Part shown: positions 1-55,469 of the stretch, in pieces
Position numbering within the stretch: the stretch's first letter is position 1
How the letters are laid out: each line of letters begins with the position of its first letter
DNA from: Mobula hypostoma
Taxonomy: Eukaryota
Length of the DNA: 64,000 nucleotides
Reading direction: 5' to 3'
Assembly: GCF_963921235.1 (NCBI RefSeq)
Contig: NC_086110.1
Coordinates: 13,578,001 to 13,642,000 of the forward strand
The notes under the pieces: model-generated
Seen by the model: only the letters and a program-made list of their open reading frames with translations
Database searches by the model: none
Told to the model about the DNA's origin: nothing
Made by a program: the position numbers and the translations under genes

Positions 1-260
1 TCTCATCCTCAGTAGGTTCACATTCCACGATCAACTCTGACGCCTGCTCATCAAATGTTCTCTTAGCTATATAATATTCACTATTTTTTCTTTGAATACC
101 TACCTTAGTCACACCCTTCTTTACATCAATTGTCAATTTTTTAGCAATATCCCGCAACTCATACGTTTTAGCTGACTTTCAAAGCACCAGATCTGGTGAT
201 TTCAGAAAGTCTCTACCTTCCATTTCTGCTGTCTTTCCACACAACCAAACCAAAAGTTTT
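1..260 (-). mobile_element. gag N-terminal fragment and leader of a second Gmr1-like LTR element copy (runs off the window)
   Basis: Aligns by eye to 4045-4290, the gag start of element A (e.g. cccgcaactcata, ctaccttagtcac). Confidence 0.8.
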
Positions 261-269
261 GTTATGTGG

Positions 270-3200
270 AGAAACTCCCCGCCAGTCAACCCCTTCTTAA
301 CTGTTGGAATACAAATTTGGGTCGAGCCGCCTGATCGATCCTCCAAAACCCACTTTCTCTGGGGGCACAACAATGCTCATTCAGTGTCCAGATCATGTGT
401 CTGAGGTCTGTATCATCTGACGTCCTATTTATCTCACCAGGCTGAGCGTCACCTGTCATTCAAAGAATCCCTCCTTCCTTTGTCTGTTAAGGAAATGCAC
501 AAGCAGGCGACAAGTCCTTGAAGAAATATCAACAACCTGCTGAAAATCATAACATCGAGTGTCCATTAAATAACACCGTCTTCGGTCACCATAGGAACTT
601 ACGAGCTGCTCAGTGCTGTCTCCAACTCCAAACTCAGTAAAAATCCCAAATTGCCTCCAATGCCTTAAAGTAACAGTCCAACCGTTAATCTTCGTCTCTC
701 TCTCCTTTCCAAACAAACCATCAATGATGAATGTCTCTCTCTCTCTCTGTCTCTCTTCAAACAGTTAATAGGGGTACTCCTGGATCCCCTCGCACTCCCC
801 TTCTTCAGGGAAAGAATTTGTCGAAGACGATTTTTTTTAAAAAAATGTTTATCACAGGGTTTTAAACAATACAGGGAAAAACATCATATGACAAAGCAAA
901 AATGGTTACAGTTTTCATCTTAACTTCAGGATAACTAATCAGCTATGATGTTTTTCAGTACCTTTTACATGTTTGATTTTTACGTCACCTTCCTGCAATA
1001 TCGGACTCTATTTTAAGAACCTTCTATTCTTATCCTTCATCTTAATTAGAAACATCAACGGATTATATCACATGTAAACCACAAGTGGTCTCTGAGCAAC
1101 AGAAAGGTTTTGAGGTCTCAGATCATAGTCCTCAAAATGTTGTAAAGCCAGAATAAGTGCTAGTAATTCCTTTTCAATAGTTGAATAACTTTTCTGGTGT
1201 ACATTAAAGTTCTTTGAGAAATAAGCTACTGGATGCTCAATGTCATCCATTCCTTTCTGTAACAGTACTGCCCCAGCAGCTTCGTCACTAACACCTGTTG
1301 TTATAGAAAATGGCTTTGAAAAATCAGGTGCTTTAAGCAGATGATAACACAGGATGGTTTCCTGACTCTTAAATGCCTCCTGGCAAAAGTGACTCAATTC
1401 AAATCTCTCACTCTTCCCTGGGAGCTTTGTTAGAGGGAGAGCGATGTCAGCAAAGTTCTTACATAACTTTTCATAATACCCAACCATTCCTAAACCCCTT
1501 CTTAAAGCAATCTTGACGGTTAGAACAGGATTTCAGAAGTAGCTTGAACCTTGGCCTTTACAGAAGTCAGTTGGCCTTGGCCCAACACATAATCCAGATA
1601 TGTAACTATGGCATGGCCAAACTCACTTTTAGCAAGGTTCACAGTAAGAGTGGCATTGGAAGGTCTGTCAAACCGTTTTTCCTCAGCTGCAATATGCTCT
1701 TCCCACGCATCATTCCAGACCACTAATTCATTGATATCAACCCCTGTGCTTTCTAACCCTCCAATCACAGAATTTATCATTCTCTGAAATGTTTCTAGAG
1801 CATTCTCCATCCCAAAGTGTAAAACATTGTATTCATACAGTCCAGACGGTGTCACAAATGCTGATATCTCTTTAACCCTCTCTGTTAAAGGAACACCCCG
1901 GTATCCTTTTAACAAGTCAATCTTAGTAAGATATTTAGCCTTCCCCACTCTATCAATGCAGTCATCCATTCTCTTTCTTTGTTCTTTCTTGTTTCTAATT
2001 CCTTGTTCAACCCTTTTAACTTTGTGAAGATGCCATTTCATAAGCTGGGCTAAATTCATAATGATGTCATGCACTGCACCTGTGCACCATTTCAAAACGC
2101 AAATTAGTCCTTTTACTTTTTTTTTCGGCTTTGGGTCCAACTGGTGGACCTTATCAGTAATAGTTTCCAAAACAATGGAATTCTGACATCTGGGTGAGTC
2201 TAGATTCAATGCGTAAACATGCATTTCCATTCCATTATCAGATTTCACCATTCCATTTTGCTCTACAACAATTCTCCCAGCAGCAATTCCAGTGAACAAG
2301 TGTCTTATTTTGAATCGACCATTTTCTAAACTTTCTTTGGCAAAGTCACAAAGCTTACTAAATCACTTCCGGAGTTCACTGAATAGGGTCAAAGGACCTT
2401 TTGGCCTGTAACTGAACACATGTTCCAACAAATTACCCTTCACTGCTTTCTAAATGGAATCTCCAACAATAAATAAAAGGAGGGGATCTCCCTCGTTCCC
2501 ATTTTCCTTATTTCTCACACAGTGATGTCCACCTAAAGACATCCTGTAAGCCATGTTTACAATTTCAGCCTTGTAACATTTCAAAACCACCACGTGACTT
2601 GCTGGCACAGTGGCTGGTCTCCACTTCCTCATCAACATCCCATCTTTAAAGTAATATCCTATTGACTCTCTCTGAACCTCCTCTGCTCTGAGAGCTATCT
2701 CTCTTAAAGCCGGCATTCCACAATCTTGCTTCTGCTCCTCGATACATTCCTTTCTCAACAAAGACAAGCCTTTCTTATACACCTTACCCATTTCAATTGT
2801 ACTACCCTCTAAGTCCTGCTGAAATCTGGAAGGTAGAAAAGTCTGTGACACATCATTATAATTTAAACCTCCGGTTTTCCTATCAAAAGTCTCAGTAGCA
2901 ACTTTGCATATTAGCTGAATAGCTGAAACGCTCTTATCTTGCAGAGCTGTAAACATGCCTCCATTGTTTACTAAACTCAGTACCAGCATCAGGATGATCA
3001 GAATCATGTATACATTATGAAGGAGACCAAATAAACCACCCATCTGATTACGACCTATACTTCGACTTGTATCCACGGCAACTTCCACTCCAAAACCAGA
3101 ACAATTCTTCTTTTCCTCGTCCAAAACATCACCCTGAATAACAGGATGACCTTGCAGGTGCTTAGATGTCCAAACAAAATCCAACAGAGCGGCACATCCG

Positions 3201-5159
3201 CTCTCAGCAGGCCTTTGCCCTGCAAGCAGGGTCAAAGGCCGCGCAACCAATCCACCTTTTTCCAGCACTGTATCCAAGAGTCCAGGAACAGCACTTTTCC
3301 CATTACTTCCAGCAACATTGACCTCAGCAGCTTTTAAAACACGGTCTAGTACAAATGACTGAGAATCCTCACATTCCACTGATATCACTGTTAACGCCTT
3401 ACTTACTGAACCAAGTCCGTCTGACACAAAAGATCTGCATTCCCTTTCCGCCAAGTCAGACACCTCAGACCTCAACTGAGCCTCAACATAAGGTTCAGAA
3501 TCCTGTGATATCACAGGTACTTCAACAACCTGGACACATTCAATCGGAATAACTGCCTCTTCTGGGGTGTCATCACTTGTCCCAGTTTCAGATTGAAAGT
3601 CATCTCGAACCTCCCAGCTGTTCTCTGGACAACTCCTTTCTGGAGTAAACTCAACCTCATCGGTTAAAACTTCTTTGTCTGTTTTCTTAACAAGCCCCTT
3701 CAGGGTAGGGGCATCCTCTGCCACTGGTCATGCCCTTACCTCATCAAGAACACAACTTTTAAATTCATCACACAAAACTAGCCCTTCCGAGCTGTAAAAA
3801 TCATCAGGGTCCGACACTGAACCTCTTTGCTGCAACCTCTCCCTTTTAAACTGCCTCTGCCGTTCTATCACGTGATCTTCACGTTGCCATTTCTCCCTCT
3901 CGAGCTGTCTCTGTCTTTCTGCCTTTTCTCTCGGTCTTGCTGCTTCTTCTCTCCGTTTCTCAGCCTCTCTGGCCTCTCTCTCGAGCTGTTTTAATTTCCA
4001 TTCAAGCTCCCTGTTTAATGTTTCCAGCAGAAGCTGAAGCTCATCCTCAGGTGGTTCAGCTTCCACGAACAACTCTAACGCCTCCTCATCAAATGTTCCC
4101 TTATCTATATAATATTCAATTATCTTTCTTTGAATATCTACCTTAGTCACGCCCTTCTTTACCTCAATTCTCAATTCTTTAGCAATGTCCCGCAACTCAT
4201 ACTTTTTAGTTAACTTCAAAGTCACCATGTCTGCTGGTTTCTAAAAGTCTATAACGTCCATTTCTGCTGTTTTTCCACACAACCAAATCAAAAGGGATTT
4301 TCCCCAATCAATTCAAACCAGCCTCCCGACCAATTTGTGCATATCGTGGACGCAGGCCCCAATCATGCCACGTACCCCGTGACGGGAAAAAAGAACCTGC
4401 AGAAATAGAAAACACTTTGGAATTTCGTATTGCTATAAACTAATTAATATTTATTAGTAACTACGCAATACAGTAATATCAATGTAAATAAATCACACAG
4501 GTTAGCAATGGTTATATATAAAAGTAGGTGTGGAATATATATGTATGAAAAACAAGCTTTTTTGATGACTTTAACCAGGGGGACCGGTTTTCCTGTGGTG
4601 GAGCTATCACCTCGGCAAAGGGTGGACACATAGACAACTCCCCACCAGTCAACCGCTTCTTCACCGTTGGAATAGCAATTTGGATCGATCGGCCTGATCG
4701 ATCCTCCAAAACGCACATTCTCTGCGGGCACAACAATGTTCATTCAGTGTCCATATCATATGTCTGAGGTCTGTATCATCTGACGTCCTATTTATCTCAC
4801 AGGGCTGAGCATCACCTCTCATTCAAAGAGTCCCTCCTTCTTTTGTCTGTTAAGGAAATGCACAAGCAGGCAACAAGTCCTTGAAGAAATATCAACAACC
4901 TGCTGGAAATCATAACATCGAGTGCCTATTAAATAACATCGCCTTCGGTCACCATAGCAACTTACGAACTTACGAGCTGCTCGGTGCTGTCTCCAACTCC
5001 AAACTCAGTAAAAATCCAAAGTTACTTCCAATGCCTTAAAGTGACAGTCCAACCGTTAATCTTCCTCTCTCTCTCTCCTTTCCAAACAAACCATCAATGA
5101 TGTGTCTCTCTCTGTCTCTCTTCAAACAGTTAATATGGGCACTCTTGGATCCCCTCACA
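270..5159 (-). mobile_element. Gmr1-type Ty3/gypsy LTR retrotransposon A, internally deleted and decayed
   Basis: 5' LTR 4366-5159 with TG..CA ends, followed by a degenerate tRNA-Pro-like PBS (TGATTGGGGCCTGCGTCC). gag 3728-4228; integrase N-terminus in 2450-3724 (GYYFKDGMLMRKWRP..SLGGH); RT 1520-2299 (KIDLLKGY, FQRMINSV); RNase H 1068-1487 (KAPDFSKPF, HPVAYFSK). PPT GAAGAAGGGGAG abuts a partial 3' LTR at about 270-794. Confidence 0.9.
4366..5159 (-). repeat. 5' LTR of element A
   Basis: Reads TGTGAGG...CGTGGCA on the minus strand; part 4645-5159 is repeated at about 283-794. Confidence 0.85.
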
Positions 5160-5315
5160 CAATGAATATCAATCAATATTTATAACCTGTTCACTTAATG
5201 ATGATTGGAAATCTTATTTAGATAAATGGGGAACAATGGCCATACCATTTGTGACTCGTGTAAAATTGATCCATATGCTACAAAAGAGTAACTGTCTTTC
5301 AGCTGTGTACATCTT

Positions 5316-5873
5316 GTTCGTCCATCATTGACGTCGATGAGGACCTCGACTCCATTATGATGGTGTCGAGACTAGCGCGTGATTTGGATTTAAGTGAGGG
5401 AGAGTTGAGCAGCGTCAGCCTCACTTTCTCTTCCCAATTCCCATCTGGATCCAGTGGAAAGAGAGAATCTAGACGGCTGGAGATGGGACTAGGCTCAGTG
5501 GATGACCAGGACGTCTTCTGTGTCTTGTCCTGCTCTACACGTTCCACGACGCTTGCAGAGACCGCCTTCTTGACCGTTGGACCTTCCATTGGTCTCGTCC
5601 GCTCAATCCGCCGGAGTCTGTCTTCACATGCTGGGATAGACAACTCCCTATCTCACCGAGGGTTTGAGACCCGTCGGCTATCCTCACCTGGTTTAGCCGG
5701 CTTGTCGAAGCCGTTGCCCGGGGTGTGGCCACTGTCGCATCCAAACAGCTACGGGGAGCCACAGGTGAGAGCTGAGTGCCAGGTGGGGACCAAAGGTGGA
5801 CTAACCGCCCTGAAAAGGACGCGACATGTTCCCCCACAAGAGGTGCTACCCCTCCCTGACACCCCATACGCCT
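5316..5873 (-). mobile_element. Short non-autonomous retroelement (RTE-like 5' end suspected) with 12-bp TSD
   Basis: Flanking direct repeats tgtgtacatctt (5304-5315) and tgtgtccatctt (5874-5885), 11/12 identical; GC-rich body in AT-rich flanks; HDV-like ribozyme at its 5' end. Confidence 0.7.
5683..5865 (-). ncRNA. HDV-like self-cleaving ribozyme (predicted nested double pseudoknot)
   Basis: P1 GGGGUGU (5865-5859)/ACACCCC (5726-5720); P2 CUCACCUG (5769-5762)/CAGGUGAG (5690-5683); P3 GGC/GCC; L3 starts UCCCCGU; GGGCAA follows P1'; P4 CGGC-UUCGACAA-GCCG; J4/2 GCUAA with the catalytic-C equivalent at 5696. Confidence 0.8.
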
Positions 5874-6084
5874 TGTGTCCATCTTATCCCTGGATTCAAT
5901 GCATGGAAGCCAGCAACCGTCTAAATTGTAGCTGTCTAATGGTACTGCTGATTAGTTATCAACATGATAAGCACAAAGATTTAGAGATTTCAGTGGAAGT
6001 AATTTCCTCATATCATTTTCTGCATGTTTTGGCCATTAATATGACGCTATTAAGCAGAAATGCTTGCAGATCTATGTAAAACTA

Positions 6085-6570
6085 GACCACCTGTATTTAC
6101 GTGTGAACCTATTTCTCACTGGGACCAGATGCGATATACCCCGGACTACTGTGGACGTAAGGAAGTAGATCGTTGAGCCTCTGGTGATGATCTTTGTATC
6201 ATCAGTAGTGCATGAGAAGTCCTGGAAGACTGGAAGGTTGCAAATGTTGTTCCCTTGTTGAAGAAAGGGAGTAGCAATAACCCAGGAAATTATAGACAAG
6301 TGACTCTAAGTTCAGTAGCGGGCAAATTGTTGGAGAAAATTCTGAAAGGAAGGATTTATGAGAATTTAGAGGGACATAATCTGATTAACGATAGCCAGTA
6401 TGGCTTTTTCAAGTAAGGTTGTGCCTTACGAGCCTATTGAATCCTATGAGGATGTAACAAAACACATTGACAAAGTACAGCAATGGATGTAGTGTATACT
6501 GATTTCAGTAAGTTATTTGACAAGGTTCCCCATGTGAATCTCATTCAGCAAGTATTCCTACAGGCTGGGA
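6085..6570 (+). mobile_element. CR1 LINE RT fragment, degenerate
   Basis: Remnant RT N-terminal motifs (ANVVPLLKKGSSNNPGNYR; atttgacaaggttcccc, i.e. FDKVP). Confidence 0.8.
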
Positions 6571-6619
6571 ACTCAGGAAGATTTTGAACGGATTTCGCGC
6601 GTGTTAGAATTACCAGTGC

Positions 6620-8030
6620 CCCATTATAATCTTATTACAATTACAGCACGGAAACAGGCCATCTCGGCCCTTCTAGTCCGTGCCGACTCTTACTCTCACC
6701 TAGTCCCATCGAACTGCACTCAGCCCATAACCCTCTATTCCTTTCCAGTCCATATACCCATTCAATTTTACTTTAAATGACAACATCGAACCTGCCCGAA
6801 CCACTTCTGCTGGAAGTTCGTTTCAAACAGCTACCACTCTCTGAGTAAGGAAGTTCCTCCTCATGTTACCCCTAAATTTTTCCCCTTTAACTCTCAACTC
6901 ATGTCCTCTTGTTTGAATCTCCCCCACTCTCGATGGAAAAAGCCTATCCACGTCAACTCTATCTATCCCCCTCATAATTTTAAATTCCTCTATCAAGTGC
7001 CCTCTCAACAATCTACGCTCCAAAGAATAAAGACCAAACTTGTTCAACCTTTCTCTGTAACTTAGGAGATGAAACCCAGTTAACATTCTAGTAAATCTTT
7101 TCTGTTCTCTCTCAATTTTGTTGACATTTTTCTTATAATTCGTTGACCAGATCTGTACACAATACTCCAAATTTGGCCTTACCAATCCCTTGTACAATTG
7201 GAAAATTACATCCCAACTCCTCTACTCAATGCTCTGATTTATAAAGGCCAGCATACCAAAAGCTTTCTTCACCACCCTATCCACATGAGATTCCACCTTC
7301 AGGCAACTATGCACCAGTATTCCTAGTTCCCTCTGTTCTACTCCATTCTTCAATGCCCTACCATTTACCATGTATGTCCTATTTCGATTAGTCCTACCAA
7401 AACGTAGCACCTCACATTTATCAACATTAAAAGCCATCTGCTATCCTTCAGCCCACTCTTCTAACTGGCCTAAATCTCTCTACAAGCTTTGAAAACCCAC
7501 TTCATTGTACACAACTGCTCCTGTCTTAATATCACTGCATACTTACTAATCCAATTTACTACGCCACCATCCGGATCATTAATATATATGGCAAACAACA
7601 TTCGACCCAGTACAGATAGCTGAGGCACACCACTGGTCACTGGCCTCCAATCTGACAAACAGTTATCCACCACTACTCTCTGGCATCTCCCATTCAGCCA
7701 CTGTTGAATCCATTTTACTACTTCAATATTAATACCTAACGATTGAACCTTCCTAACTAACCGTACGTGTGGAACCTTGTTAAAGGCCTTACTGAAGTCT
7801 ACATAGACAGCATCCATCGCTTTACCCTTGTCAACTTTCCTTGCAACCTCTTCAAAAAATTAAATAAGATTTGTCAGACATGACTTTCCACGCACAAATC
7901 CATGTTGACTGTTCCTAATCAGACCCTGTCTATCTAGATAATTATATATATCATCTCTAGAAATACTTTCCATCAATTTAACCACCACTGACGTCAAACT
8001 CACAGGCCGATAATTGCTAGGTTTACTCTC
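6620..8030 (-). mobile_element. CR1 LINE 3' portion (RT and 3' UTR), decayed
   Basis: ORFs 7860-8057, 7470-7817, 7222-7437 and 6823-7197 carry NYRPVSLTSV, QHGF, DFSKAFNKVPH, GVPQ, LVRPNLEYC, LERRLLRG. Confidence 0.92.
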
Positions 8031-8899: not shown

Positions 8900-11800
8900 G
8901 AAAGCAGAAATTAAAGACTGCCGTGATCCAGAACGGAGAGGAGATACTGTGAGCCTGCTAGAGATACCCGCATGGTGTGCTGCCTCCCAGGTGCCAGGGT
9001 ACGAGATGTCTCGGATCGAGTCCTGAATATTCTCAGGGGGGAGGGTGAGCAGCCAATTGTCTTGGTACATGTTGGTACCAATTACATAGATAGGACAAAC
9101 GAGGAGGTCCTGAAGAGAGATTTCTGGGAGTTAGGAAGAAGCTGAGAAGCAGCACCTCCAGGGTAGTAATCTCGGGATTGCTACCTGTGCCACGTGCTAG
9201 CGAGGGCAAGAATAGTAGCATGAGGCAGATGAATGGGTGGCTGAGAGACTGGTACAAGGGGCAGGGCGTCAGATTCTTGGATAATTAGGATCTTTTCTGG
9301 GGGAAGTATGACCTGTTCAAAAAGAACGGGTTACACCTGAACCCGAAGGGGGCCAATATCCTGGCGGGAAAGTTTAATAGAGCTGTTAGGGAGGTTTTAA
9401 ACTAATTTGGCATGGGGGATGGGAACCGGAATGACAGTGCGGAGGAAGGGGAAAACAGAAATAAATCTAAGATTGTGAGCAGTAAAGATGTCGGGAAAGT
9501 CAGGCAGGTGATGGGGCAATGGGATGTTACTTAGGAAAATTCAGTCGCCCGGTATACATGGAGAGGTGGTAAATTGGATTAGACATTGGCTCAATGGAAG
9601 AAGCCAAAGAGTGGTAGTAGAGAATTGCTTCTCCGAGTGGAGGCCTGTGACTAGTGGTGTGCCACAAGGATCAGTGCTGGGTCCGTTATTTGTTATCTAT
9701 ATCAATGATCTGGATGATAATGTGGTAAATTGGATCGGCAAATTTGCTGATGATACAAAGATTGAGGGTGTAGTAGACAGTCAGGAAGGTTTTCAGAGCC
9801 TGCAGAGGGACTTGGACCAGCTGGAAAAATGGGCTGAGAAATGGCAGATGGAGTTTAATACAGACAGGTGTGAGGTATTGCACGTTGGAAGGACAAACCA
9901 AGGTAGAACATACAGGGTTAATGGTAAGGCACTGAGGAGTGCAGTAGAACAGAGGGATCTGGGAATACAGATACAAAATTCCATAAAAGTGGCGTCACAG
10001 GTAGATATGGTCGTAAAGAGAGCTTTTGGTGCATTGGACATTATTAATCAAAGTATTGTGTATAAGAGCTGGATTGTTATGATGAGGTTGTATAAGGCAT
10101 TGATGAGGCCGAATCTGGAGTATTGTGTTCAGTTTTGGTCGCCAAATTACAGGAAGGATATAAATAAGGTTGAAACAATGCAGAGAAGGTTTACAAGGAT
10201 GTTGCAGGGACTTGAGAAACTCAGTTACAGAGAAATGTTGAATAGGTTAGGACTTTATTCCCTGGAGCGTAGAAGAATGAGGGGAGATTTGATTGAGGTA
10301 TATAATATTATGATGGGTGTAGATAGAGTGAATGCAAGTAGGCTTTTTCCACTGAGGCAAGGGGAGAAAAAAACCAGAGGACATGGGTTAAGGGTGAGGG
10401 GCGAAAAGTGTAAAGGGAATATTAGGGGGGGTGGGCTTCTTCACACAGAGAGTGGTGGGAGTATGGAATGAGCTGCCAGGCGAGGTGGTAAATGCGGGTT
10501 CTTTTTTAACATTTAAGAATAAATTGGACAGATACATGGATGGGAGGTGTATGAATGGATATGGTCCGTGTGCAGGTCAGTGGGACTAGGCAGAAAATGG
10601 TTCGGCACAGCCAAGAAGAGCCAAAAGGCCTGTTTCTGTGCTATAGTTTTTCTATGGTTTCAATGGTTTCTGAATGTTTAGCCACTGGGATGCGTTGCTG
10701 TGCAATAAATTTGCAGTGAAATCAAAGCGAAAAGTAGCAAATACTGGTCTGAAGGTGTTATACTGAAATGCATGCAGCATAAGGAATAAGGTGGATGATC
10801 TTGTCGTACAGCTACAGATTGGCAGGTATGATATTGTGGCCATCACTGAGACGTGGCTAAAGGATGCATGTGCCTGGGAGAGGGGGAGGCGTAGCTTTAT
10901 TGGTAGGAAATGATATTAAATCATTAGAAAGAGGTGATATAGGATCAGAAGGTGCAGAATCTTTATGGGTTGAGCTAAGAAATTGCAAGGGCAAAAGGAC
11001 CCTGATGGAAGTTATTTAGAGGCCTCCAAACAGGTGCAGGGATGTGGACTACAAATTACAACAGGAAATAGAAAAGGCTTGTCAGAAGCGCAGTGTTATG
11101 ATAATTGTGGGGGATTTTAACATGCGAGTGGATTGGAAAAATCAGGTCGGCACTGGATCTCGAGAGAGACTTTGTAGAATGTCTGCGAGATGGCTTTTTA
11201 GACCAGCTTGTTGTTGAGCCCACCAGGCTGTACTGGATTGGGCATTGTGTAATGAACCGGAGGTGATTAGGGTGGTTGAGGTGAAAGAACCCTTAGGAGG
11301 TAGTGATTGAGTTCACTGTGACATTTGAAAAAGAGAAGCCGAAATATGATGTGTCGGTATTTCAGTGGAGTAAAGGAAATTACATGAGACAGGAACTGGA
11401 CAAAGTTGACTGGAAAGGGATACTGGCGGGAAAGACGGCAGAGCAGCAGTGGCTGGAGTTAATGCGAGAAGTGAGGCAGGTGAAGGCAGGTATATGGCAG
11501 AAAAGAAGAATTTTTCGAATGGAAAAAGGGTGCAACCGTCGTTGACAAGAGAAGTCAAAGCCAAAGTTAAAGCAAAGGAGCGAGCATACAAGGAAGCAAA
11601 AATTAGTGGAAAGACAGAGGATTGGGAAGTTTTTAAAACCTTACAAAAGGAAACTAAGAAGGTCATTAAGAGAGAAAAGATTACTATGAAAGGAAGCTAG
11701 AATATAATATCAAAGAGGATACTAAAAGCGTTTTCAAATATATAAAGAGTAAAAGACAGGTGAGAGTAGATATAGGACCGATAGAAAATGATGCTGGAGA

Positions 11801-17682: not shown

Positions 17683-18260
17683 CTGTAACTTTAAGGAAAT
17701 AAAACGAAAAGAGGCGTTTTATGTTTAATGGAAACTGTAACATGTTTTATTGAACACATCACCTACAAACCAAAGCGGACTAACACTCTATGTGTGATAA
17801 CGTCGTCACTACGGAGCAGCCCATTAAAGTGAAATCCCAACCCAAAAACGTTACCCTTCACAAAGCCTCCCCACCCCAACCCCCACAATGAGCCTACTGT
17901 CGGAATGGGGCCACACTCAGTTTCCAGAGTTGTTGTATAGCAGTTACCTTCCGGTTAAGTTTGTCTTTTGTTTACTTTTCACTAGTATTGAGCAGAGTTA
18001 AATAAATGTTAGCAACACACACCAAAGTTACTGGTGAACGCAGCAGGCTAGGCAGCATCACTAGGAAGAGGTACAGTCGAAGTTTCGGGCTGAGACCCTT
18101 CGTCGAGACTAACAGCAGGAAGAGCTAGTAAGAGATTTGAAAGTGGGAGGGGGAGAAGGAGAACCAAAATGATAGGAGAAGACAGGAGAGGGAGGGATGG
18201 AGCTAAGAGGTGGACAGATGATTGGCAAAAGGGATATGAGATGATCATGGGACAGAAGGC

Positions 18261-18690
18261 CCATGATCCTCTCATATCCCTTTTGCACCTGTCCCATGAT
18301 CCTCTCATATCCCTTTTGCCCCTGTCCCATGATCCTCTCATATCCCTTTCGCCTCTGTCCCATGAACCTCTCATATCCCTTTTGCCCCTGTATCATGATC
18401 CTCTCATATCCCTTTTGCCCTGTCCCATGATCCTCTCATATCCCTTTTGCCCTGTCCCATGATCCACTCATATCCCTTTTGCCCCTGTCCCGTGATCCTC
18501 TCATATCCCTTTTGCCCCTGTATCATGATCCTCTCATATCCCTTTTGCCCTGTCTCATGATCCTCTCATATCCCTTTTACCCCTGTCCCATGATCCTCTC
18601 ATACCCCTTTTGTCGCTGTCCCATGATCTTCTCATATCCCTTTTGCCCCGGCCCATGATCCTCTCATATCCCTTTTGCCCCTGTCCCATG
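18261..18690 (+). repeat. 33-bp minisatellite, about 13 copies (cccatgatcctctcatatcccttttgcccctgt)
   Basis: ccatgat recurs at 18261, 18294, 18327 and onward. Confidence 0.95.
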
Positions 18691-18820
18691 ATCAACTCCT
18701 ATCCCTTTTGCCAATCACCTGTCCAGCTCTTGGCTCCATCCCTCCACCTCCTGTCTTCTCCTATCATTTTGGATCACCCCCTCCCCCTCCCACTTTCAAA
18801 TCTCTTACTAACTCTTCCTT

Positions 18821-18863
18821 CAGTTAACCCTGACGAAGGGTCTCGGCCCGAAACGTCGACTGT
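18821..18863 (+). ncRNA. Minimal type-I hammerhead ribozyme motif of a Penelope terminus
   Basis: CUGACGA, stem II GGG..CCC, GAAAC, GUC cleavage triplet; stem I weakened; the inverted copy (about 18075-18112) has a mutated core (UCGACGA, UUC). Confidence 0.65.
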
Positions 18864-19799
18864 ACCTCTTCCTAGAGTTGCTGCCTGGCCTGCTGCATTC
18901 ACCAGCAACTTTGATGTGTGATGCTTGAATTTCCAACATCTGCAGAATTCCTCCTGTTTACGTTAATAAATGTTACGTTTGTTTATTAAACCTGACTCAC
19001 TTCTATATTCATTTCTGCTGATGACATAACAATCCTTTCACGCTTGGAATGCTGTCAGTCATCGATATGGTTTAAGATTAAAACTTTAAACTCCGTTTCA
19101 TTTCATATTGTTATGAAACCTCTCATTTTTTCTCTTTCCGGAAAGCACACGTCGTAGAATCGCAAACAATTATATCACAGAACACATTAGAAACATTCAG
19201 TTGCGAGGAAGAGGCTTGGAAGTTAATTTATGGAGAAATAATCCATTGTCTGTAACCTAAATGTTGAGCTTTAAAAAAGGCCAAAACTTCGCAATTTGAT
19301 TTTTGAGACAAATGTAAATTTTTACCACAAACGCTTTCAATGATATCATCAGCGGGCACGTTAGTGCATTTCCATGCTCTGCTATTTCTAATTTCCTGAT
19401 AACCTGCACGAGGAGTTCGTTGTAGATTTTTAGCTGAAAGAAACATTGAAGCCTGGAATGCATCACGGAAGAGGGCTCTTCCACCCCTGTCATCCACCCC
19501 TGTCATCCATTCTGAACAAAACATTTGCGTAGCCTTTCTTTTATCTGCCTCCAGCACGGTACCACTTACTCTAACAGCTTGTTCTATATACCTACTATCT
19601 TCTGTCTGAAAACCGTGCCATTCCCAGTTCCTCCTTAAATATTTTCTCTTCCAGTTCACAGCTATGTTTCTAGATTTGGATCCCCTGTATTGAGAAATCG
19701 ACTATGAGCATCTCGTATGTTAATGTCCGTAACAATTGTGTGTGTTTTTTTTTTCCACATTCATAAGGTAATCACTCAGTCACCTGTACTCCGGGTGTC

Positions 19800-33504: not shown

Positions 33505-35880
33505 ATATAATCATATAACTATATAACAGTTACAACACGGAAGCAGGCTATCTCGGCCCTTTTAGTCCGTGCCGAAATCTTACCTAATCCCATCGACCTG
33601 CACTCATCCTCTATTACTTTCCTGGCCATATAGCTGTCCAATTTAACTTTAAACGACAACGTCGAACCCGCCTCAACCACTTCTGCTGGAAGCTCGTTCC
33701 ACACAACTACCATTCTCTGAGTAAGAAGCTTCCCCTCATGTCACCCCTAAACTTTTGTCCTTTAACTCTCAACTCATGTCCACTTGTTTGCATTTCTCCC
33801 ACTCTCCACGTCAACTCTATCTATCCCCCTCACAATTTTAAATACCTCTGTCAAGCCCCCTCTCAACTTTCTACATTCCAAACAATAAAGACCCAACTTG
33901 TTCAACCTTTTTCTGTAACTTAGATGATGAAACACACGTAACATTCTAGTAAATCTTCTCTGTACTCTCTATTTTGTTGACATCTTTCCTATAATTCAGT
34001 GACCAAAACTGTACACAATATTCCAAATTTGGCCTCACCAATGCCTTGTACAATTTCAACCTTACATCCCAACTCCTATACTCAATGCTCTGAATTATAA
34101 AGGCCAACATATCAAAAAGCTTTCTTCACCACTCTATCCATATAAGATTCCACCTTCAGGGAACTATGCACCATTATTCCTACATCCCACTGTTCTCAAC
34201 ATTCTTCAATGCCCTACCGTTTACCATGTAGGTCCTATTTTGATTAGCCCTACCAAAATGTAGCACCTCACATTTATCAGCATTAAACTCCATCTGCCAT
34301 CTTTCAGCCCACTCTTCTTACGGGCCTAAATCTCTCTGCAAGCTTTGAAAACCTACTTCATTATTTACAATTCCACCTATCTAAGTATCATATGCATACT
34401 TACTCATCCAATTTACCACCCCATCATCTAGATCCTTAATGAATATGACAAATAACATTGGACCAGTACAGGTCCCTGAGGTACACCACTAGACACCGGC
34501 CTTTATTTTGACAAACCGTTATCCACCAAGACTCTCTGGCGTCACCCATCCAGCCACTGCTGAATCCATTTTACCACTTCAATATTAATACCTAACGATT
34601 GAAACTTCCTAACCAGCCTTCCGTGTGGCAACTTGTCAAAGGCCTTACTGAAATCCATATAGACAACATCCACCACTTTACCCTCGTCAGCTTTCCCAGC
34701 AACCTCATCAAAAAATTCAATAAGATTTGTCAAACATGACCTTTCACGCACAAATCCATGTTGAGTGTTTCTAATCAGATCCTGTCTATCCAGATAATTA
34801 TATATACCATCTCTAAGAATACTTTCCAACACTTTACCCACCACTGACATCAAACTCACAGGCTGATTATTGCTAGGTTTAATCTTAGAACCCTCTGTAA
34901 ACAGTGGAACAACATGAGCAAAACGCATATCCTCTGGCACCATCCCCGTTTCTAATGACATTTGAAATATTTCTGTCAGAGCCCCTGCTATTTCCATACT
35001 AACTTCCCTCAAGGTCCTAGGGAATATCCTTTCAGGACCCGGAGATTTATCCACTTTAATATGCCTTAAAAGCTCCAGTACTTCCTCTTCTTTAATCATC
35101 ATAGTTTCCATAATTCCCTACCTGTTACCCTTATCTCACACAACTCAATATCCTTCTCCTCAATGAATACCGAAGAAAAGAAATTGTTCAGAATTTTTCC
35201 CATCACTTATGGCTCTACACATAGCTGTCCACGCTGATTCTCTAAGGGACCAATTTTATTCCTCACTATCCTTTTGCTCTTAATATAAAGGTAGAAACCC
35301 TTGGGATTTATTTTCACCTTACTTTCCAAAGCCCAACCTCAAATCTTATTTTAGCTTTACTAATTTTAATTCTTAAGATTATTTTTACATTCTTTATATT
35401 CCTCGACCGCCGCATTTACTCCATGCTGCCTTTATTAATTGTAGATATCTCTCTTTTTCTAAAGCAAGCTTCCAATATCCCTTGAAAGCCATGGCTCTCT
35501 CAAACTTTTAATCTTTCCTTTCAACCTAACAGGAACATAAAGATTCTGTACTCTCAAAATTTCACCTTTAAATGACCTCCATTTCTTTATTATATTCTTC
35601 CCATAAAACAAATTGTCACAATCCACTCCTTCTAAATCCTTTCGCATCTCCTCAAAGGTAGCCTTTCTCCAATCAAAAATTTCAACCCTGTGTCCAGACC
35701 TATCCTTCTCCATAATTATATTGAAACTAATAGCATTGTGATCAGCGGACCCGAAGTGCTCCCCAACACAAGCCTCCTTCACCTGACCAGTCTCACTCTC
35801 TAGCAGCAGATCCAACACTGCCCCTTCTTTCGTTGGTACCTCTATGTATTGCTGCAAAAAACTATCCTGAGGGCTAAATT
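33505..35880 (-). mobile_element. CR1 LINE (endonuclease end, RT, 3' UTR)
   Basis: ORFs 35459-35857 (EGAVLDLLL, EHFGSADHN) and 34542-35111 (KSPGPE, QHGF, DFSKAFDK). Confidence 0.92.
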
Positions 35881-50435: not shown

Positions 50436-51600
50436 ATAGAACCATAGAACCATAGAAACTACAGCACAGAAACAGGCCTTTTGGCCCTTCTTGGCGGTGC
50501 CGAACCATTTTCTGCCTAGTCCCACTGACCTGCACACGGACCACATCCCTCCATACACCTCCCATCCATGTATCTGTCCAATTTATTCTTAAATGTTAAA
50601 AAAGAACCCGCATCTACCACCTCATCTGGCAGCTCATTCCATACTCCCACCACTCTCTGTGTGAAGAAGCCCCCGCTAATGTTCCCTTTAAACTTTTCCC
50701 CCCTCACCCTTAACCCATGTCCTCTGGTTTTTTTCTCCCCTTGCCTCAGTGGAAAAAGCCTGCTTGCATTCATTCTATCTATATCCATCATAATTTTATA
50801 CACCTCTATCAAATCTCCACTCATTCTTCTACGGTCCAGGGAATAACGTCCTAACCCAGTCAACTTTTCTCTGTAACTGAGTTTCTCAAGTCCCGGCAAC
50901 ATCCTTGTAAACCTTCTCTGCACTCTTTCAACCTTATTTATATCCTTACTGTAATTTGGTGACCAAAACTGAACACAATACTCCAGATTTGGCCTCACCA
51001 ATCCCTTATACAACCATATCATAACATTCCAGCTCTTATACTCAATACTTTGATTAATAAAGGCCAATATACCAAAAGCTCTCTTTACGACCCTATCTAC
51101 CTGTGACGCTACTTTTGGGAATTTTGTATCTGTAGTCCCAGATCCGTATGTTCTACTGCACTCCTCAGTGCCTTACCATTAACCCTATATGTTCTACCTT
51201 GGTTTCTCCTTCCAACGTGCAATACCTCACACTTGTCTGTATTAAACTCCATCTGCCATTTTTCAGCCCATTTTTCCAGCTGGTCCAAGTCCCTCTGCAG
51301 GCTCTGCAAACCTTCCTCACTGTCTACTACACCTCCAATCTTTGTATCATCAGCAAATTTGCTGATCCAATTTACCACATTATCATCCAGATCATTGATA
51401 TAGCTGACAAGTAACAATGGACCCAGCGCTGATCCCTGTGGCACACCACTAGTCACAGGCCTCCACTCAGAGAAGCAATTCTCCACTACCACTCTTTGGC
51501 TTCTTCCATTGAGCCAATATCTAATCCAATTTACCATTTCTCCATGTATACCTAGCGATTTAATTTTCCTAACTCACCTCCCATGCGGGACCTTGTCAAA
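50436..51600 (-). mobile_element. 5'-truncated CR1 inserted in inverted orientation
   Basis: ORFs 51109-51537 and 50516-51067 (KFADDTK, RPNLEYC); (CTATGGTT)n tail at 50436-50456. Confidence 0.92.
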
Positions 51601-52085: not shown

Positions 52086-53214
52086 AAATGCAGCAGAGTA
52101 CCAAATGAATCTGTATAACTGGGTAGGATTCCATTGTGTGAAGTACATTTGGATTGGTACATGGGTAGAACATTTAATTGTGCTGAGATCCAAACGCAGC
52201 CAAATAGGGCCAATTGGGGTTTTCAATAGTGCAATAGTTCAATAGTTCCAATTTAATATCACTGAATACAAAACAATATAAAACCTGAAATTCTTAGCCT
52301 TCGCAGACATCCATGAAATAGGAAAGTACCCCCAAACAATCAATGACAGCAGAAACGTTAGAATTGTGGTCAGAAAACGTTAGAAAACGTTAGAAGGCTT
52401 TGGGGAAACTTCTCCTCCCCCTCCCACCCACAAGTACCACTTCCTCCAATGTTACTTCTACCCCTACAAGCAAACAATAGCAAACACCCCTGTCATGGTC
52501 TGGTCCATGAAATCTGCATTCCGGTTCACCGTCCGGTCTTCGGACGCAGGACTCCGGGTTTTCCAGCTGTCCCTCGTTTGGTTGACTTAATCATAGGCAC
52601 CTGATTCCCGTCTTTGGGCTTGGAATATAAGTAGTGTGGGCTTCTGGTTTGTCTTGTCAGTCCCCCTTGGAGCAAGCTGCTGATGGATGGTTGGTGAAAC
52701 TATTTGTGATCTCTAGGCCTGGTTGGAGGACCACCGCTTCAGAGAGCCTTATTGCCACTCGTTGGCGTAGTCTTGGCAGTATGGATTCGGCAGTTTCCCG
52801 GGCCAGCTGAGTTGCCGTCAACCACTCCGAGCTAGGTAGGGATCCGGCTGTTTCTGTAGCCATCGGAGGTTGCTGTCTGTAACTGCGGCTCGGAGAAACC
52901 CCGAAGCAGAGATGGAACTGTCTGTCGTTCTTTGGTGTTCGTCTCTTCTTATCCTCGCCTCTGTGTAGTAAGTCCGGCCATTCTGCCGTTGCCCAACAGG
53001 TGGACCTGTCCCACGTTGGTGTGGAGAGGTCGAGTCCCGGCTTGTCTTAGTAGAAGCCCCGGCTCTATGTCTATGTACTGTCCTGTCTCATGTTGGTGTT
53101 GTGTTAACGATGAGTCCTGGCTTTTCGAGGGACAATTCCCGGCTCTGTGTTGATGTTCAGTTTCCAGTCGGTATCTCAGCTCCAGCCTCCAAGTTATCAG
53201 CCTTCGCATTTCAA

Positions 53215-53957
53215 GACGAAGATTCCGCAGCCAAACTCCAAAAACTAAAGCCTCGAAGATCCCGCAGCCAAGCTCCAGGAACCCAAGCCTCGAAGATCCC
53301 GCAGCCAAGCTCCAAGAACCCAAGCCTCGAATATCCCGCAGCCAAGCTCCAAGAACCCAAGCCTCGAAGATCCCGCAGCCAAGCTCCAAGAACCCAAGCC
53401 TCGAAGATCCCGCAGCCAAGCTCCAAGAACCCAAGCCTCGAAGATCCCGCAGCCAAGCTCCAGGAACCCAAGCCTCGAAGATCCCGCAGCCAAGCTCCAG
53501 AAACCCAAGCCTCGAAGATCCCGCAGCCAAGCTCCAGGAACCCAAGCGTCGAAGATCCCGCAGCCAAGCTCCAAGAACCCAAGCCTCGAAGATCCCGCAG
53601 CCAAGCTCCAAGAACCCAAGCCTCGAATATCCCGCAGCCAAGCTCCAAGAACCCAAGCCTCGAAGATCCCGCAGCCAAGCTCCAAGAACCCAAGCCTCGA
53701 AGATCCCGCAGCCAAGCTCCAAGAACCCAAGCCTCGAAGATCCCGCAGCCAAGCTCCAGGAACCCAAGCCTCGAAGATCCCGCAGCCAAGCTCCAGGAAC
53801 CCAAGCCTCGAAGATCCCGCAGCCAAGCTCCAGGAACCCAGGCGTCGAAAATCCCGCAGCCAAGCTCCAGGAACCCAAGCGTCGAAGATCCCGCAGCCAA
53901 GCTCCAGGAACCCAAGCGTCGAAGATCCCGCAGCCAAGCTCCAGGAACCCAAGCGTT
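53215..53957 (+). repeat. 37-bp minisatellite, about 20 copies (gaagatcccgcagccaagctccaRgaacccaagcctc)
   Basis: gaagat at 53255 and 53292; 37-aa translational period (3x37 nt). Confidence 0.95.
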
Positions 53958-54250
53958 GAAGATCGCGCGGCCAATCCTCCAAGATCCCAAGCGTGGAAGA
54001 TCGCGCGGCCAAGCCTCCAAGATCCCAAGCGTGGAAGATCGCGCGGCCAGGCCTCCAAGATCCCAAGCGTGGAAGATCGCGCGGCCAAGCCTCCAAGATC
54101 CCAAGCGTGGAAGATCGCGCGGCCAAGCCTCCAAGATCCCAAGCGTGGAAGATCGCGCGGCCAAGCCTCCAAGATCGCAAGCGTGGGAGATCGCGCGGCC
54201 AAGCCTCCAAGATCCCAAGCGTGGAAGATCGCGCGGCCAAGCCTCCAAGC
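53958..54250 (+). repeat. 38-bp minisatellite, about 8 copies (gaagatcgcgcggccaagcctccaagatcccaagcgtg)
   Basis: gaagat at 53958 and 53996; unit homologous to the 37-mer. Confidence 0.95.
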
Positions 54251-55469
54251 TCAAGACCCAAGGCCCCAGCCCGCAGCTAAGCTCAAGACCCAAGGCCCCA
54301 GTCTCAAGCCTCAAGAGTAAAGACTCCAGCCTGTCTCCAAGCTCAGGCCTCTAGACTCCAGACGCGTCCTGTCCTGAAGCCATGTTATGTCTTTGCCTGG
54401 TTCTGGTGTCCGAGCCCGCGGCAAGACCCAGGTTCTGGGTCCTTGTCCAATCTTGGGCTCGGAGTCGTAGTCTTTTCTCCTAATCTCTGGTTTCTCTTCC
54501 TGGTCCCGCTTTCACGAGCCCAAGTCTGCATTCTTGTCCCTGCTCCCTGCCTGTATCCTGTCACGTCCCTAGTCTAGTCAAGTCCTGTTCCTTGTACTTC
54601 ATTGTCTATGTCTCGTATTTGGGATCGTTCACAGCACCGTAGTGTGACAACCGAAGAAATCCATGATTTGCAGTACAAAAAAAACTAATCGCCCTGCCAA
54701 CGAATTCAACGTGCCCCATCTCCCTCTGTCCCTAATAAAGGGACAAAGATTTGTCACACATCGACAGAGGGGAACAACAAAGCAAACAATTCGAAGAGTT
54801 ACGATGTTAAAGTCTGCTCTATTGCTCTTATTCGAGAGAAAGAGAAAGAAAGAGAGAGAGAGTGAGTCCAGTGAAGAAGTAAAAAGTGGACCCCCACCTA
54901 TGAAATCAATTGGAGTGCAAAACTACCTACCTGGAGTTCAGAACTGCAAGGTTTGTTCTTAGACTGGAAGGAAATGATGGGAATCACATTCAAGGGGAAA
55001 ATAGAGTACAGATTCCTCATCAGTTTCAAATACACGTTACAAATATCGACCAGATTTTTTTAATTCAACAGATGCTTGTTAATTGAAACTTGTACTGGAA
55101 AAAATGTATTTTGGTCTTTGAAAGTAGTGATAACAAAAAAAAATCTATTTTCCTGTTGGGATGAAAAATTTTGGAAGCTTTTAATTTAGCCCCCCAAAAA
55201 AAGAATCACCCGTTTAAATCGATTTCGATTTGACAGCCCGAGTTAACACTGGAGACAACTGAACTAATTTTCTCAAGATTCGTATCGGACTATTGATGTA
55301 AGCCCATGAATTATGCAATATTATTCATGTGCATGGTTTTATCACATAAAATCTTTACCTGGCCATCGGGATCGATGACATAGTTGAAGCGTTTTTTTTA
55401 ACAAACCTCTTGCAATTACTGCAAATTCCACGATACTTCCGGTTATAACTTAAAAGCTTCTAGGGAGAA

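What the first reader, a model, noticed from the sequence alone, without database searches (positions are those of the whole stretch)
5683..5865. Complete HDV-like ribozyme with a hairpin inserted in loop L3
Seen: every element of the HDV nested double pseudoknot is present and paired on the minus strand. These are a 7-bp P1 starting at G5865, an 8-bp P2, a 3-bp P3, P1.1 (CC in L3 with GG 5719-5718), GGGCAA, P4 and J4/2 GCUAA. J1/2 is about 89 nt. L3 keeps U20 and G25 (UCCCCGU) but then carries a hairpin GCUGU-UUGGAUGCG-ACAGU where HDV has U27. Established: HDV-like ribozymes occur in the 5' UTRs of R2, RTE and other non-LTR elements, and U27 is not required for HDV cleavage. Inference: a probably active ribozyme with an unusual peripheral domain.
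Basis: partly seen in the sequence, partly recalled or inferred. Interest (0 to 1): 0.85.

Follow-up and report, generated by a model that had tools for sequence, protein, structure and literature searches.

The report
Self-cutting RNA heading a ray retroposon
This is one copy of a very abundant short jumping element of rays whose first ~190 bases fold like the hepatitis-delta self-cutting RNA, with an extra hairpin next to the active-site loop; it is a known trick of such elements in an unusual form, and this copy has a damaged cutting-site strand.

Summary
It is not chance. The stretch is the head of a 558-nt element (5873->5316) flanked by target-site duplications (TSDs). The family gives over 10,000 contig pieces in each of two related genomes. 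Its first ~500 nt match the 5' UTR of a single-ORF LINE (endonuclease plus reverse transcriptase) that looks RTE-type.

Across seven copies the catalytic core is 84-95% identical, against 26% in the flanks. P2, P4, the L3 hairpin and the J1/2 rod carry compensatory changes. A covariance model built without the window finds it at 117 bits. Rfam finds nothing.

The reading needs one correction. In the family the element starts 9 nt further upstream, as GGGGUGU-AU-GGGGUGUCAGG. The terminal strand is the likely P1 and cleavage site. In this copy the terminal strand is degenerate (AAGGCGU), so cutting at G5865 is possible but unproven.

Verdict: a real HDV-like ribozyme family and a new structural variant of a known kind, since the L3-side hairpin is conserved. 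The scan has noted this family many times elsewhere in this genome. Cleavage is untested.

The parts
5874..5885 (-). Upstream target-site duplication, AAGAUGGACACA
   Evidence: Matches 5315-5304 (AAGATGTACACA) at 11 of 12 bases. Family depth stops at 5873/5874.
5316..5873 (-). 558-nt non-autonomous retroposon: LINE 5' UTR plus a short 3' tail
   Evidence: Depth of 11-13 thousand contig pieces per run is confined to 5302-5873. Positions 5869-5370 are 72-75% identical to the 5' UTR of LINE copies L004 and L005.
5866..5873 (-). Remnant of the family's terminal P1 strand plus spacer (AGGCGUAU; family consensus GGGGUGU-AU)
   Evidence: The loose-end consensus shows GGGGT before G5869 in 63 and 98 contigs. 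L001, L003, L005 and L006 carry it. At least 11 antisense ORFs carry the two-strand motif and then unrelated flank.
5859..5865 (-).
   Evidence: Pairs perfectly with 5726-5720. It also pairs with CCUGGCACUC 5783-5774.
5774..5864 (-). Structured J1/2 rod (P1.2-type peripheral domain)
   Evidence: 29 pairs, 92.5% of cells paired against 37-52% when slid, 5 pairs with changes on both sides. It folds as a rod in all seven copies.
5762..5769 (-). P2 5' strand, CUCACCUG
   Evidence: 8 bp with 5690-5683. C-G becomes U-A in L002 and U-A becomes A-U in L003 and L006.
5758..5760 (-). P3 5' strand, GGC
   Evidence: Invariant in 7 of 7 copies; pairs with 5729-5727.
5750..5757 (-). L3, UCCCCGUA (equivalents of U20, C21, C22 and G25)
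   Evidence: U, C, C and G are invariant. The two middle Cs are AA in a subfamily, 11-88% of depth depending on species.
5731..5749 (-). Hairpin between L3 and the P3 3' strand: 5-bp stem, 9-nt loop
   Evidence: The stem is kept in 7 of 7 copies (97% of cells paired), with U-A to G-C in L005. The loop varies. The family consensus closes it with G-C where this copy has G-U.
5727..5729 (-). P3 3' strand, GCC
   Evidence: Invariant.
5720..5726 (-). P1 3' strand, ACACCCC
   Evidence: Nearly invariant across copies: one substitution in L001 and one deletion in L006.
5714..5719 (-). GGGCAA: the P1.1 guanines 5719-5718 and the junction to P4
   Evidence: GGCAAC is invariant in 7 of 7 copies.
5698..5713 (-). 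P4 hairpin, CGGCUU-CGAC-AAGCCG
   Evidence: Three pairs carry changes on both sides: G-C to C-G in L004, G-C to A-U in L002, and one more. The same G-C to C-G swap appears in a minor subfamily.
5691..5697 (-). J4/2, GCUAAAC, with C5696 as the equivalent of catalytic C75
   Evidence: The G and C are invariant in 7 of 7 copies. The next base varies (U, C or A), as it does between genomic and antigenomic HDV. The following As are conserved.
5683..5690 (-). P2 3' strand, CAGGUGAG
   Evidence: See the P2 5' strand.
5316..5369 (-). 3' tail of the element, ending ...GGACGAACAA
   Evidence: Not homologous to the LINE 5' UTR. The family's loose ends read (TTG)n on the + strand, which is (CAA)n on the element strand, with no poly(A).
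5304..5315 (-). Downstream target-site duplication, AAGAUGUACACA

Best explanation
The stretch is the 5' head of a young, TSD-flanked, protein-less retroposon (5873->5316, minus strand). The element derives from the 5' UTR and 3' tail of a single-ORF LINE that looks RTE-type and is very abundant in rays. The head encodes an HDV-like self-cleaving ribozyme. Its likely role, by analogy with RTE, R2 and L1Tc elements, is to cut the element's RNA out of read-through host transcripts and so define the 5' end of the transposition intermediate. The core is canonical: P1', P1.1, P3, L3 with U-C-C...G, GGGCAAC, and J4/2 with an invariant C. Three peripheral features stand out. (1) A conserved 5-bp hairpin lies between L3 and the P3 3' strand, in effect extending P3 across an asymmetric internal loop. 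(2) A ~90-nt rod in J1/2 matches the P1.2 helix that pinches P1 and P2 together in mosquito RTE ribozymes. (3) Two tandem GGGGUGU strands sit at the very 5' end. In the family the terminal strand most likely forms P1, so cleavage gives element nucleotide 1, while the second strand closes the J1/2 rod. In this window copy the terminal strand is degenerate (AAGGCGU). Shown: the pairings, conservation, covariation, element boundaries and LINE homology. Inferred: catalysis, which strand is P1, and the biological role.
For: Pairings are present. The TSD and the family boundaries coincide. The family is high-copy in several coded organisms and appears in probable RNA assemblies. Homologous heads sit upstream of EN or EN+RT ORFs in L002, L004, L006 and two further places. 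Relatives of the ORF include proteins named craniofacial development protein 2, a name I take as an RTE-type marker. Conservation peaks on the core, 84-95% against 26% in the flank and 51% downstream. There are 8 pairs with changes on both sides, matched by 0 of 500 shuffles, and 91.7% of cells are paired against 31-49% when slid. The leave-one-out covariance model gives 117 bits. For the terminal-strand P1: the loose-end consensus is GGGGT at the boundary; L001, L003, L005 and L006 start with GGGGTGT; at least 11 divergent antisense ORFs show T-P-x-T-P type motifs followed by unrelated sequence. Cleavage at the element's 5' end is the reported rule for RTE, R4 and L1 ribozymes (PMC3774820). 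A structured J1/2 helix activates RTE-type ribozymes (PMC4908430).
Against: No cleavage assay exists and no RNA 5' ends are available, because every holder run was kept as contigs only. P1', P3 and P1.1 never vary, so covariation says nothing on them or on which GGGGUGU strand pairs with ACACCCC. Pairing counts are in fact slightly higher for the second strand (87.5% against 79.2%). L004, which has an intact ORF, lacks the terminal strand. Only seven full sequences were available, and they are decaying genomic copies. No Rfam HDV-family model matches. The RTE assignment rests on ORF architecture, the names of relatives and the tail, not on a phylogeny.
Confidence: 0.72

Rival explanations
1. 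The reader's register is the functional one for the whole family. P1 is the second GGGGUGU (G5865 here) and J1/2 starts at CAGG. The upstream GGGGUGUAU is a leader, or a by-product of 5'-end joining or slippage, and not part of the ribozyme.
For: The second strand is perfect in the window, L002, L004 and L006, and pairs in 87.5% of cells. L004, with an intact 1092-aa ORF, has no upstream strand. The 9-nt unit varies in number and form: L006 has an exact GGGGTGTCA duplication, and P0035 and P0018 show 6-nt periods. That pattern looks like slippage at the end. P1 (-11.8 kcal/mol) is stronger than the GGGUGU/GCACUC part of the rod (-5.8).
Against: Cutting at the second strand would remove the upstream 9 nt at every retrotransposition. 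Yet those bases are the conserved first bases of the element in most copies and in subfamilies under 50% identical at the ORF level. Changes in the second strand fit the rod rather than P1: G to A in L003 gives A-U in the rod but A.C in P1. Other copies in this genome were read as 192-195-nt ribozymes that start at element nucleotide 1 (these are unchecked notes).
Confidence: 0.2
2. The conserved fold is not catalytic. It is a 5' UTR structure kept for another purpose, such as binding the element's protein, IRES-like translation or RNA stability, and it only resembles HDV.
For: No cleavage has been shown. HDV-like folds in R2 and L1Tc are also proposed to bind protein or act as IRESs (PMC6765202). 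No Rfam HDV model matches. L3 is not a closed 7-8-nt loop.
Against: The invariant positions are exactly the HDV catalytic ones: C in J4/2, U-C-C and G in L3, GG of P1.1, and GGGCAAC. The variable regions are the known dispensable ones: P4, J1/2 interior and hairpin loop. The element's 5' end coincides with the first base of a P1 strand. A non-catalytic fold predicts none of this.
Confidence: 0.06
3. This is a chance match of a permissive HDV descriptor in repeat-rich DNA.
For: The MFE z-score is only -0.31. The descriptor allows a long J1/2 and an L3 insertion.
Against: The fold recurs in thousands of copies and in distant copies with compensatory changes. The leave-one-out model gives E about 3e-26.
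Confidence: 0.01

Closest known systems
drz-Agam-2 family: HDV-like ribozymes of Anopheles RTE elements with a P1.2 helix in J1/2 (Ruminski et al. 2011; Webb et al. 2016, PMC4908430)
   Same: Both are HDV-type double pseudoknots at the 5' end of an RTE-type element. Both have a long structured J1/2 whose closing helix brings P1 and P2 together. In both, cleavage is expected at the element's first nucleotide.
   Different: Here a 5-bp hairpin is inserted between L3 and the P3 3' strand. The closing strand of the J1/2 rod is a tandem duplicate of the P1 strand. There is no detectable sequence match, and the Rfam drz-Agam models do not hit.
R2 retrotransposon ribozymes (Eickbush and Eickbush; PMC3774820)
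   Same: Both self-process out of a co-transcript. Both have very long J1/2 loops and conserved P1.1, P3 and L3. In both, the cleavage position is set by which ~7-nt strand pairs with P1'.
   Different: R2 is site-specific in 28S rDNA and often takes its P1 strand from upstream 28S sequence. Many R2 ribozymes lack P4. An L3-side hairpin is not described in that paper.
L1Tc and NARTc of Trypanosoma cruzi (PMC3383444, PMC3185411)
   Same: An autonomous LINE and its short non-autonomous derivative share the same 5' HDV-like ribozyme.
   Different: L1Tc is a different LINE clade with a 77-nt minimal ribozyme that doubles as a promoter. It has no L3 hairpin and no large J1/2.
HDV genomic and antigenomic ribozymes
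   Same: The core sequence is close: GGGCAAC as in the genomic form, GCUAA in J4/2 as in the antigenomic form, L3 of the UCC..G type, a 7-bp P1 and a 3-bp P3.
   Different: The first P1 pair here is G1-C rather than a G.U wobble. J1/2 is ~90-100 nt rather than 4. A 19-nt hairpin sits just after the position of U27. The setting is a retroelement, not a rolling-circle replicon.

Membership tests
HDV-like self-cleaving ribozymes | Strand order of a nested double pseudoknot: P1, P2, P3, L3, P3', P1', P1.1, P4, J4/2, P2' | tested here: met
   All helices are present in that order in the window and in six other copies. 93.5% of cells are paired.
HDV-like self-cleaving ribozymes | Catalytic cytosine in J4/2 (C75/C76 equivalent) followed by conserved adenines | tested here: met
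   G-C is invariant (C5696 here) in 7 of 7 copies. The next base varies and the As are conserved.
HDV-like self-cleaving ribozymes | L3 with U, then two Cs that form P1.1 with two Gs after P1', and a conserved G (G25 equivalent) | tested here: met
   UCC and G are invariant. P1.1 is paired in 93% of cells.
HDV-like self-cleaving ribozymes | Helices supported by compensatory changes | tested here: inconclusive
   P2 (2 pairs) and P4 (3 pairs) covary. P1, P3 and P1.1 never vary, so they are neither supported nor contradicted. Only 7 sequences were available.
HDV-like self-cleaving ribozymes | L3 is a short closed loop of 7-8 nt on a 3-bp P3 | tested here: not met
   A conserved 19-nt hairpin follows the 8-nt L3 before the P3 3' strand in all seven copies.
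HDV-like self-cleaving ribozymes | Match to a curated covariance model of the family (Rfam HDV, CPEB3 or drz models) | tested here: not met
   No hit at the gathering score or at E up to 10 on the window, and none at E up to 5 on six related loci. The insertions in L3 and J1/2 probably explain this.
HDV-like self-cleaving ribozymes | Mg2+-dependent self-scission 5' of the first P1 nucleotide, giving 5'-OH and 2',3'-cyclic phosphate ends | not testable with these tools
   All runs that hold the sequence are kept as contigs, which cannot show RNA ends.
RTE-clade non-LTR retrotransposon, non-autonomous derivative | Dispersed insertion flanked by a target-site duplication | tested here: met
   A 12-bp TSD (11 of 12 bases) lies exactly at the family's boundaries.
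RTE-clade non-LTR retrotransposon, non-autonomous derivative | Shares its 5' region with an autonomous LINE encoding a single EN+RT ORF of about 1000 aa with no separate ORF1 | tested here: met
   5869-5370 aligns to the 5' UTR of L004, which is followed by an intact 1092-aa Exo_endo_phos plus RVT_1 ORF. EN ORFs also lie downstream in L002 and L006.
RTE-clade non-LTR retrotransposon, non-autonomous derivative | The ORF groups with the RTE clade | tested here: inconclusive
   Relatives are 55-66% identical across many phyla, and several are named craniofacial development protein 2, a name I link to RTE/BovB from background knowledge. No tree with reference clades was built.
RTE-clade non-LTR retrotransposon, non-autonomous derivative | 3' end without poly(A), ending in a short tandem repeat, and shared with the LINE | tested here: inconclusive
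   The family's loose ends read (CAA)n-like on the element strand. No LINE 3' end was available for comparison.

The most novel reading that the evidence does not exclude
The tandem pair of identical P1 strands may be functional redundancy or a switch. Normally the terminal strand forms P1 and the second closes the activating J1/2 helix. When the terminal bases are lost or garbled at integration, as in this window and in L004, the second strand can swap partners and restore cleavage 9 nt further in. The ribozyme would then survive the 5'-end erosion typical of LINE integration. Together with the conserved hairpin next to L3, which extends P3 across the active-site loop, this would be an HDV-fold architecture that current descriptors and Rfam models miss. 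By inference from peptides it is spread from rays to amphioxus.
Probability: 0.2. Interest if true: 0.7.

Novelty: new variant of a known kind. Interest (0 to 1): 0.45.

Why it matters
HDV-like ribozymes at the heads of RTE, R2 and L1Tc elements are established, so the principle is not new. Three points add something. First, a conserved helix sits at the L3/P3 junction, right beside the active site, where the known family tolerates little change. That bears on how the fold can be extended, and it explains why descriptor and Rfam searches miss this family. Second, the P1 strand is duplicated, and one copy doubles as the closing strand of the activating J1/2 helix. That suggests partner-swapping, or insurance against 5' truncation. 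Third, the ribozyme heads a very high-copy, protein-less element in rays, and its antisense ORF has been annotated as 'uncharacterized protein' in Mobula genomes. For this particular copy the practical message is smaller: it is an ordinary, slightly damaged member of that family.

Tried and rejected
Rfam at the gathering score and at a permissive E-value gave nothing relevant, on the window and on six related loci.

A plain MFE fold is no better than shuffles. It cannot represent the pseudoknot and was useful only for exposing the competing helix.

A self-BLAST of 4900-6700 against the window found no second copy. Model R1 found only this site.

Pfam on the neighbouring ORFs showed that the downstream minus-strand ORFs belong to an unrelated Ty3/gypsy-like element, not to this element. 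The + strand ORF 5357-6079 has no domain and is an antisense artefact. I used it only as a handle to fetch other copies.

Six of the twelve contig look-ups returned no DNA because the sample files were too large. These include both Mobula genomes and ERZ21830300.

Both read-laying runs could use contigs only, so RNA 5' ends, strand and expression level could not be assessed. No holder run is on record as RNA.

I considered making the hairpin stem serve as P3, with its loop as L3. I rejected this because the loop has no CC for P1.1 and it varies between copies.

Ruminski et al. 2011 (PMC3308841) is not in the library. Searches for an L3 insertion in HDV-like ribozymes, and for such ribozymes in sharks, found nothing relevant.

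Full report
**What is in the sequence**

- P1 is GGGGUGU (5865-5859) with ACACCCC (5726-5720).
- P2 is CUCACCUG (5769-5762) with CAGGUGAG (5690-5683).
- P3 is GGC (5760-5758) with GCC (5729-5727).
- L3 is UCCCCGUA (5757-5750).
- A hairpin follows: GCUGU-UUGGAUGCG-ACAGU (5749-5731).
- P1.1 pairs C5756 and C5755 with G5718 and G5719.
- GGGCAA is 5719-5714.
- P4 is CGGCUU-CGAC-AAGCCG (5713-5698).
- J4/2 is GCUAA, with C5696 in the position of the catalytic cytosine.
- J1/2 is 89 nt.

Rfam gives no match, either at gathering scores or at E up to 10 on the local region. A plain MFE fold is no better than shuffles (z = -0.31).

**Context**

The ORFs downstream on the minus strand (below 5160) belong to an unrelated Ty3/gypsy-like element with RVT_1 and RNase H domains and LTR-like direct repeats. 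Upstream lie unrelated LINE fragments.

The candidate sits in its own unit. AAGATGGACACA (5885-5874) and AAGATGTACACA (5315-5304) are an 11-of-12 target-site duplication around a 558-nt element, 5873->5316. An earlier first-reader note had proposed this (s1-143819).

I laid Logan contigs of two coded organisms on 5280-5910 at 80% likeness or better. Each gave 11,084 and 13,083 pieces. Depth fell to zero exactly at 5302-5315 and at 5873/5874. So this is one copy of a very high-copy family, and the TSD marks its true ends. Probable RNA assemblies of several organisms also hold it. They are contigs, so they say nothing about RNA ends.

**Getting other copies**

No tool searches this genome, so I used the meaningless + strand ORF 5357-6079 (no Pfam domain) as a handle. 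It finds 'uncharacterized proteins' of Mobula birostris and M. hypostoma, plus ENA and Logan ORFs. A profile search finds 61 cluster representatives, including one from Branchiostoma lanceolatum. DNA could be fetched for six places, L001-L006.

All six align to the window from about 5872-5866 onward. L004 and L005 align over 5869-5370. In L002, L004 and L006, and in two places that gave no DNA, the same strand continues into an endonuclease or EN+RT ORF. In L004 that ORF is an intact 1092-aa single ORF.

Relatives of that ORF are 55-66% identical across very distant animals. Several are named craniofacial development protein 2. From background knowledge I take that as a marker of RTE/BovB-type endonuclease domains.

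The family's 3' loose ends read (CAA)n on the element strand, with no poly(A).

The window element is therefore a non-autonomous derivative, made of the 5' UTR plus a short tail, of a LINE that looks RTE-type. The clade is not proven by a tree.

**Is the fold conserved as a structure?**

In the seven-copy alignment (A4), pairwise identity by segment is as follows.

| Segment | Pairwise identity |
|---|---|
| Upstream flank | 26% |
| P2 5' strand, P3 5' strand and L3 | 89% |
| P3', P1', P1.1, GCAA | 95% |
| J4/2 | 86% |
| P2 3' strand | 84% |
| J1/2 interior | 68% |
| P4 | 70% |
| L3 hairpin | 73% |
| Downstream of the ribozyme | 51% |

The invariant bases are the catalytic-core ones: the J4/2 G-C, the L3 U-C-C and G, and GGCAAC.

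Counting pairs gives these results.
Six pairs have changes on both sides, matched by 0 of 500 shuffles.
- P2 has two such pairs: C-G to U-A in L002, and U-A to A-U in L003 and L006.
- P4 has three, including G-C to C-G in L004. The same swap appears in a minor subfamily's loose ends.
- The L3 hairpin stem has one, U-A to G-C in L005. Its stem is kept and its loop varies.
- P1', P3 and P1.1 never vary, so covariation is silent on them.

A covariance model of the core built without the window finds 5677-5775(-) at 117.4 bits (E about 3e-26). The next best place scores 11 bits. No Rfam model recognises any of the six other copies either.

The window copy differs from the family consensus in the core at only four places. 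They are the closing pair of the hairpin (G-U here, G-C in the consensus), one loop base, one P4 pair, and a base just 3' of P2.

A subfamily has L3 UCCAAGU. It is a minority in two organisms and the majority in two others. This varies the two positions that also differ among known HDV-type ribozymes.

**Where the reading needs correction: the P1 register**

Homology among copies does not start at G5865. It starts 9 nt upstream.
- The loose-end consensus in two DNA runs puts GGGGT directly before G5869, followed by unrelated sequence.
- L001, L003 and L005 begin GGGGTGT-(AT/TGT)-..., and L006 begins GGGGTGTCA-GGGGTGTCA-GGG.
- In at least 11 divergent antisense ORFs the motif T-P-x-T-P (or H-P-x-H-P, or D-T-P-x-T-P in other frames) encodes two tandem GGNGT strands. 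It is followed at once by unrelated residues.

So the family's first nucleotides are GGGGUGU-AU-GGGGUGUCAGG. For dispersed LINEs the reported rule is cleavage at the element's first nucleotide (RTE, R4 and L1; PMC3774820). A ribozyme that cut at the second strand would lose the first 9 nt at every generation.

The second strand plus CAGG pairs with CCUGGCACUC (5783-5774), and GGGG (5852-5849) pairs with CCCC (5788-5785). Together they form the base of a rod that all seven copies fold into. The rod has 29 pairs, 92.5% of cells paired against 37-52% when slid, and five pairs with changes on both sides. Because RNAalifold derived this structure from the same sequences, the counts lean towards it.

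Changes in the second strand suit the rod rather than P1. For example, G to A in L003 makes A-U in the rod but A.C in P1.

This rod corresponds to the P1.2 helix of the mosquito drz-Agam-2 ribozymes. [quoted passage not shown]

Other first-reader notes on this family in the same genome describe 192-195-nt ribozymes that start at the element's first base. That is 183 + 9 or more. These notes are unchecked, but they fit.

In the window copy the terminal strand reads AAGGCGU, which gives -2.3 kcal/mol with ACACCCC against -11.8 for the consensus. For it to form P1 it must leave the rod. The two arrangements are about equal in nearest-neighbour energy: roughly -15 for P1 plus a shortened rod, against -17.6 for the full rod plus the weak terminal pairing.

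Cleavage at G5865 is therefore possible but not the expected outcome. L004, with an intact ORF, also lacks the terminal strand. The 9-nt unit also shows slippage-like variation.

**Comparison with known systems**

The working principle is established for R2, RTE, baggins and L1Tc/NARTc: a ribozyme at the 5' end frees a promoter-less retroelement from a co-transcript, and a non-autonomous partner shares the same head (PMC6765202, PMC3774820, PMC3383444).

Membership in the HDV-like family is met for topology, the catalytic C, L3/P1.1 and the conservation pattern. It is not met for a closed 7-8-nt L3 or for Rfam model matches. The defining activity is untested.

The hairpin lies after the eighth L3 base, next to the position of HDV U27. 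Only one base separates it from the P3 3' strand. In effect it turns L3 into the long strand of an asymmetric internal loop between P3 and an extra helix.

I found no description of such an insertion in the library searched. That is weak evidence, since the key papers are not held.

By back-translating the amphioxus peptide (...LPGVWPLRMLQLLGATGES), the same core and a GCUG...CAGC hairpin seem to exist in Branchiostoma. This is inference from amino acids, not DNA.

**Verdict**

This is a real, conserved HDV-like ribozyme family at the head of a non-autonomous retroposon that looks RTE-derived. It is a new structural variant of a known kind. This copy is a slightly damaged member, and its predicted cut site was placed on the paralogous strand. 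The scan has already noted this family dozens of times elsewhere in this genome. Catalysis, the cleavage site and the role of the hairpin all need bench tests.

Noticed in passing
window 5357-6079 (+): This 240-aa ORF is the antisense of the ribozyme element plus flank and has no Pfam domain. Equivalent ORFs are annotated as 'uncharacterized protein' in Mobula birostris and M. hypostoma, and as Hypp2644 in Branchiostoma lanceolatum. These are probably mis-annotated repeats.
   Followed up: partly
window 1-5160 (-): A Ty3/gypsy-like fragment lies here, with RVT_1 at 1520-2299 and RT_RNaseH_2 at 1068-1487. It is bounded by LTR-like direct repeats (2-795 and 4040-5160, 85-92% identical, the second about 325 nt longer). 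No integrase ORF was seen.
   Followed up: partly
window 6732-7906, 33608-34762, 50548-51423, with inverted partners near 9685-10660 and 57830-58789: Several copies of another LINE family, 70-95% alike (RVT_1 at 7470-7817, minus strand). It is unrelated to the ribozyme element.
   Followed up: no
window 53106-54318 and 18246-18778: Two tandem arrays. The first has 37/38-nt units, about 30 copies at roughly 95% identity. The second has 32/33-nt units and is flanked by a 252-nt inverted repeat (18004-18255 / 18681-18932).
   Followed up: no
window 5849-5874 (-) and the family consensus 5' end: The element's first ~26 nt hold four G-tracts (GGGG-N5-GGGG-N5-GGG-A-GGGG in the consensus). That is a possible G-quadruplex competing with P1 and P1.2. 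It was not evaluated.
   Followed up: no
relatives of the L004 ORF: The LINE's EN+RT protein is 55-66% identical to proteins in sea urchins, a soft coral, amphioxus, a slug, a mantis shrimp, a priapulid, tapeworms, a toad, a monitor lizard and a shark. This patchy, high identity is suggestive of horizontal spread of this lineage.
   Followed up: no
loose end before 5720: A minor subfamily (65-79 contigs per run) keeps P4 with a compensatory G-C to C-G swap but has AGUACA in place of GGGCAA. It would therefore lack the P1.1 guanines. This may be a dead lineage or a different arrangement.
   Followed up: no
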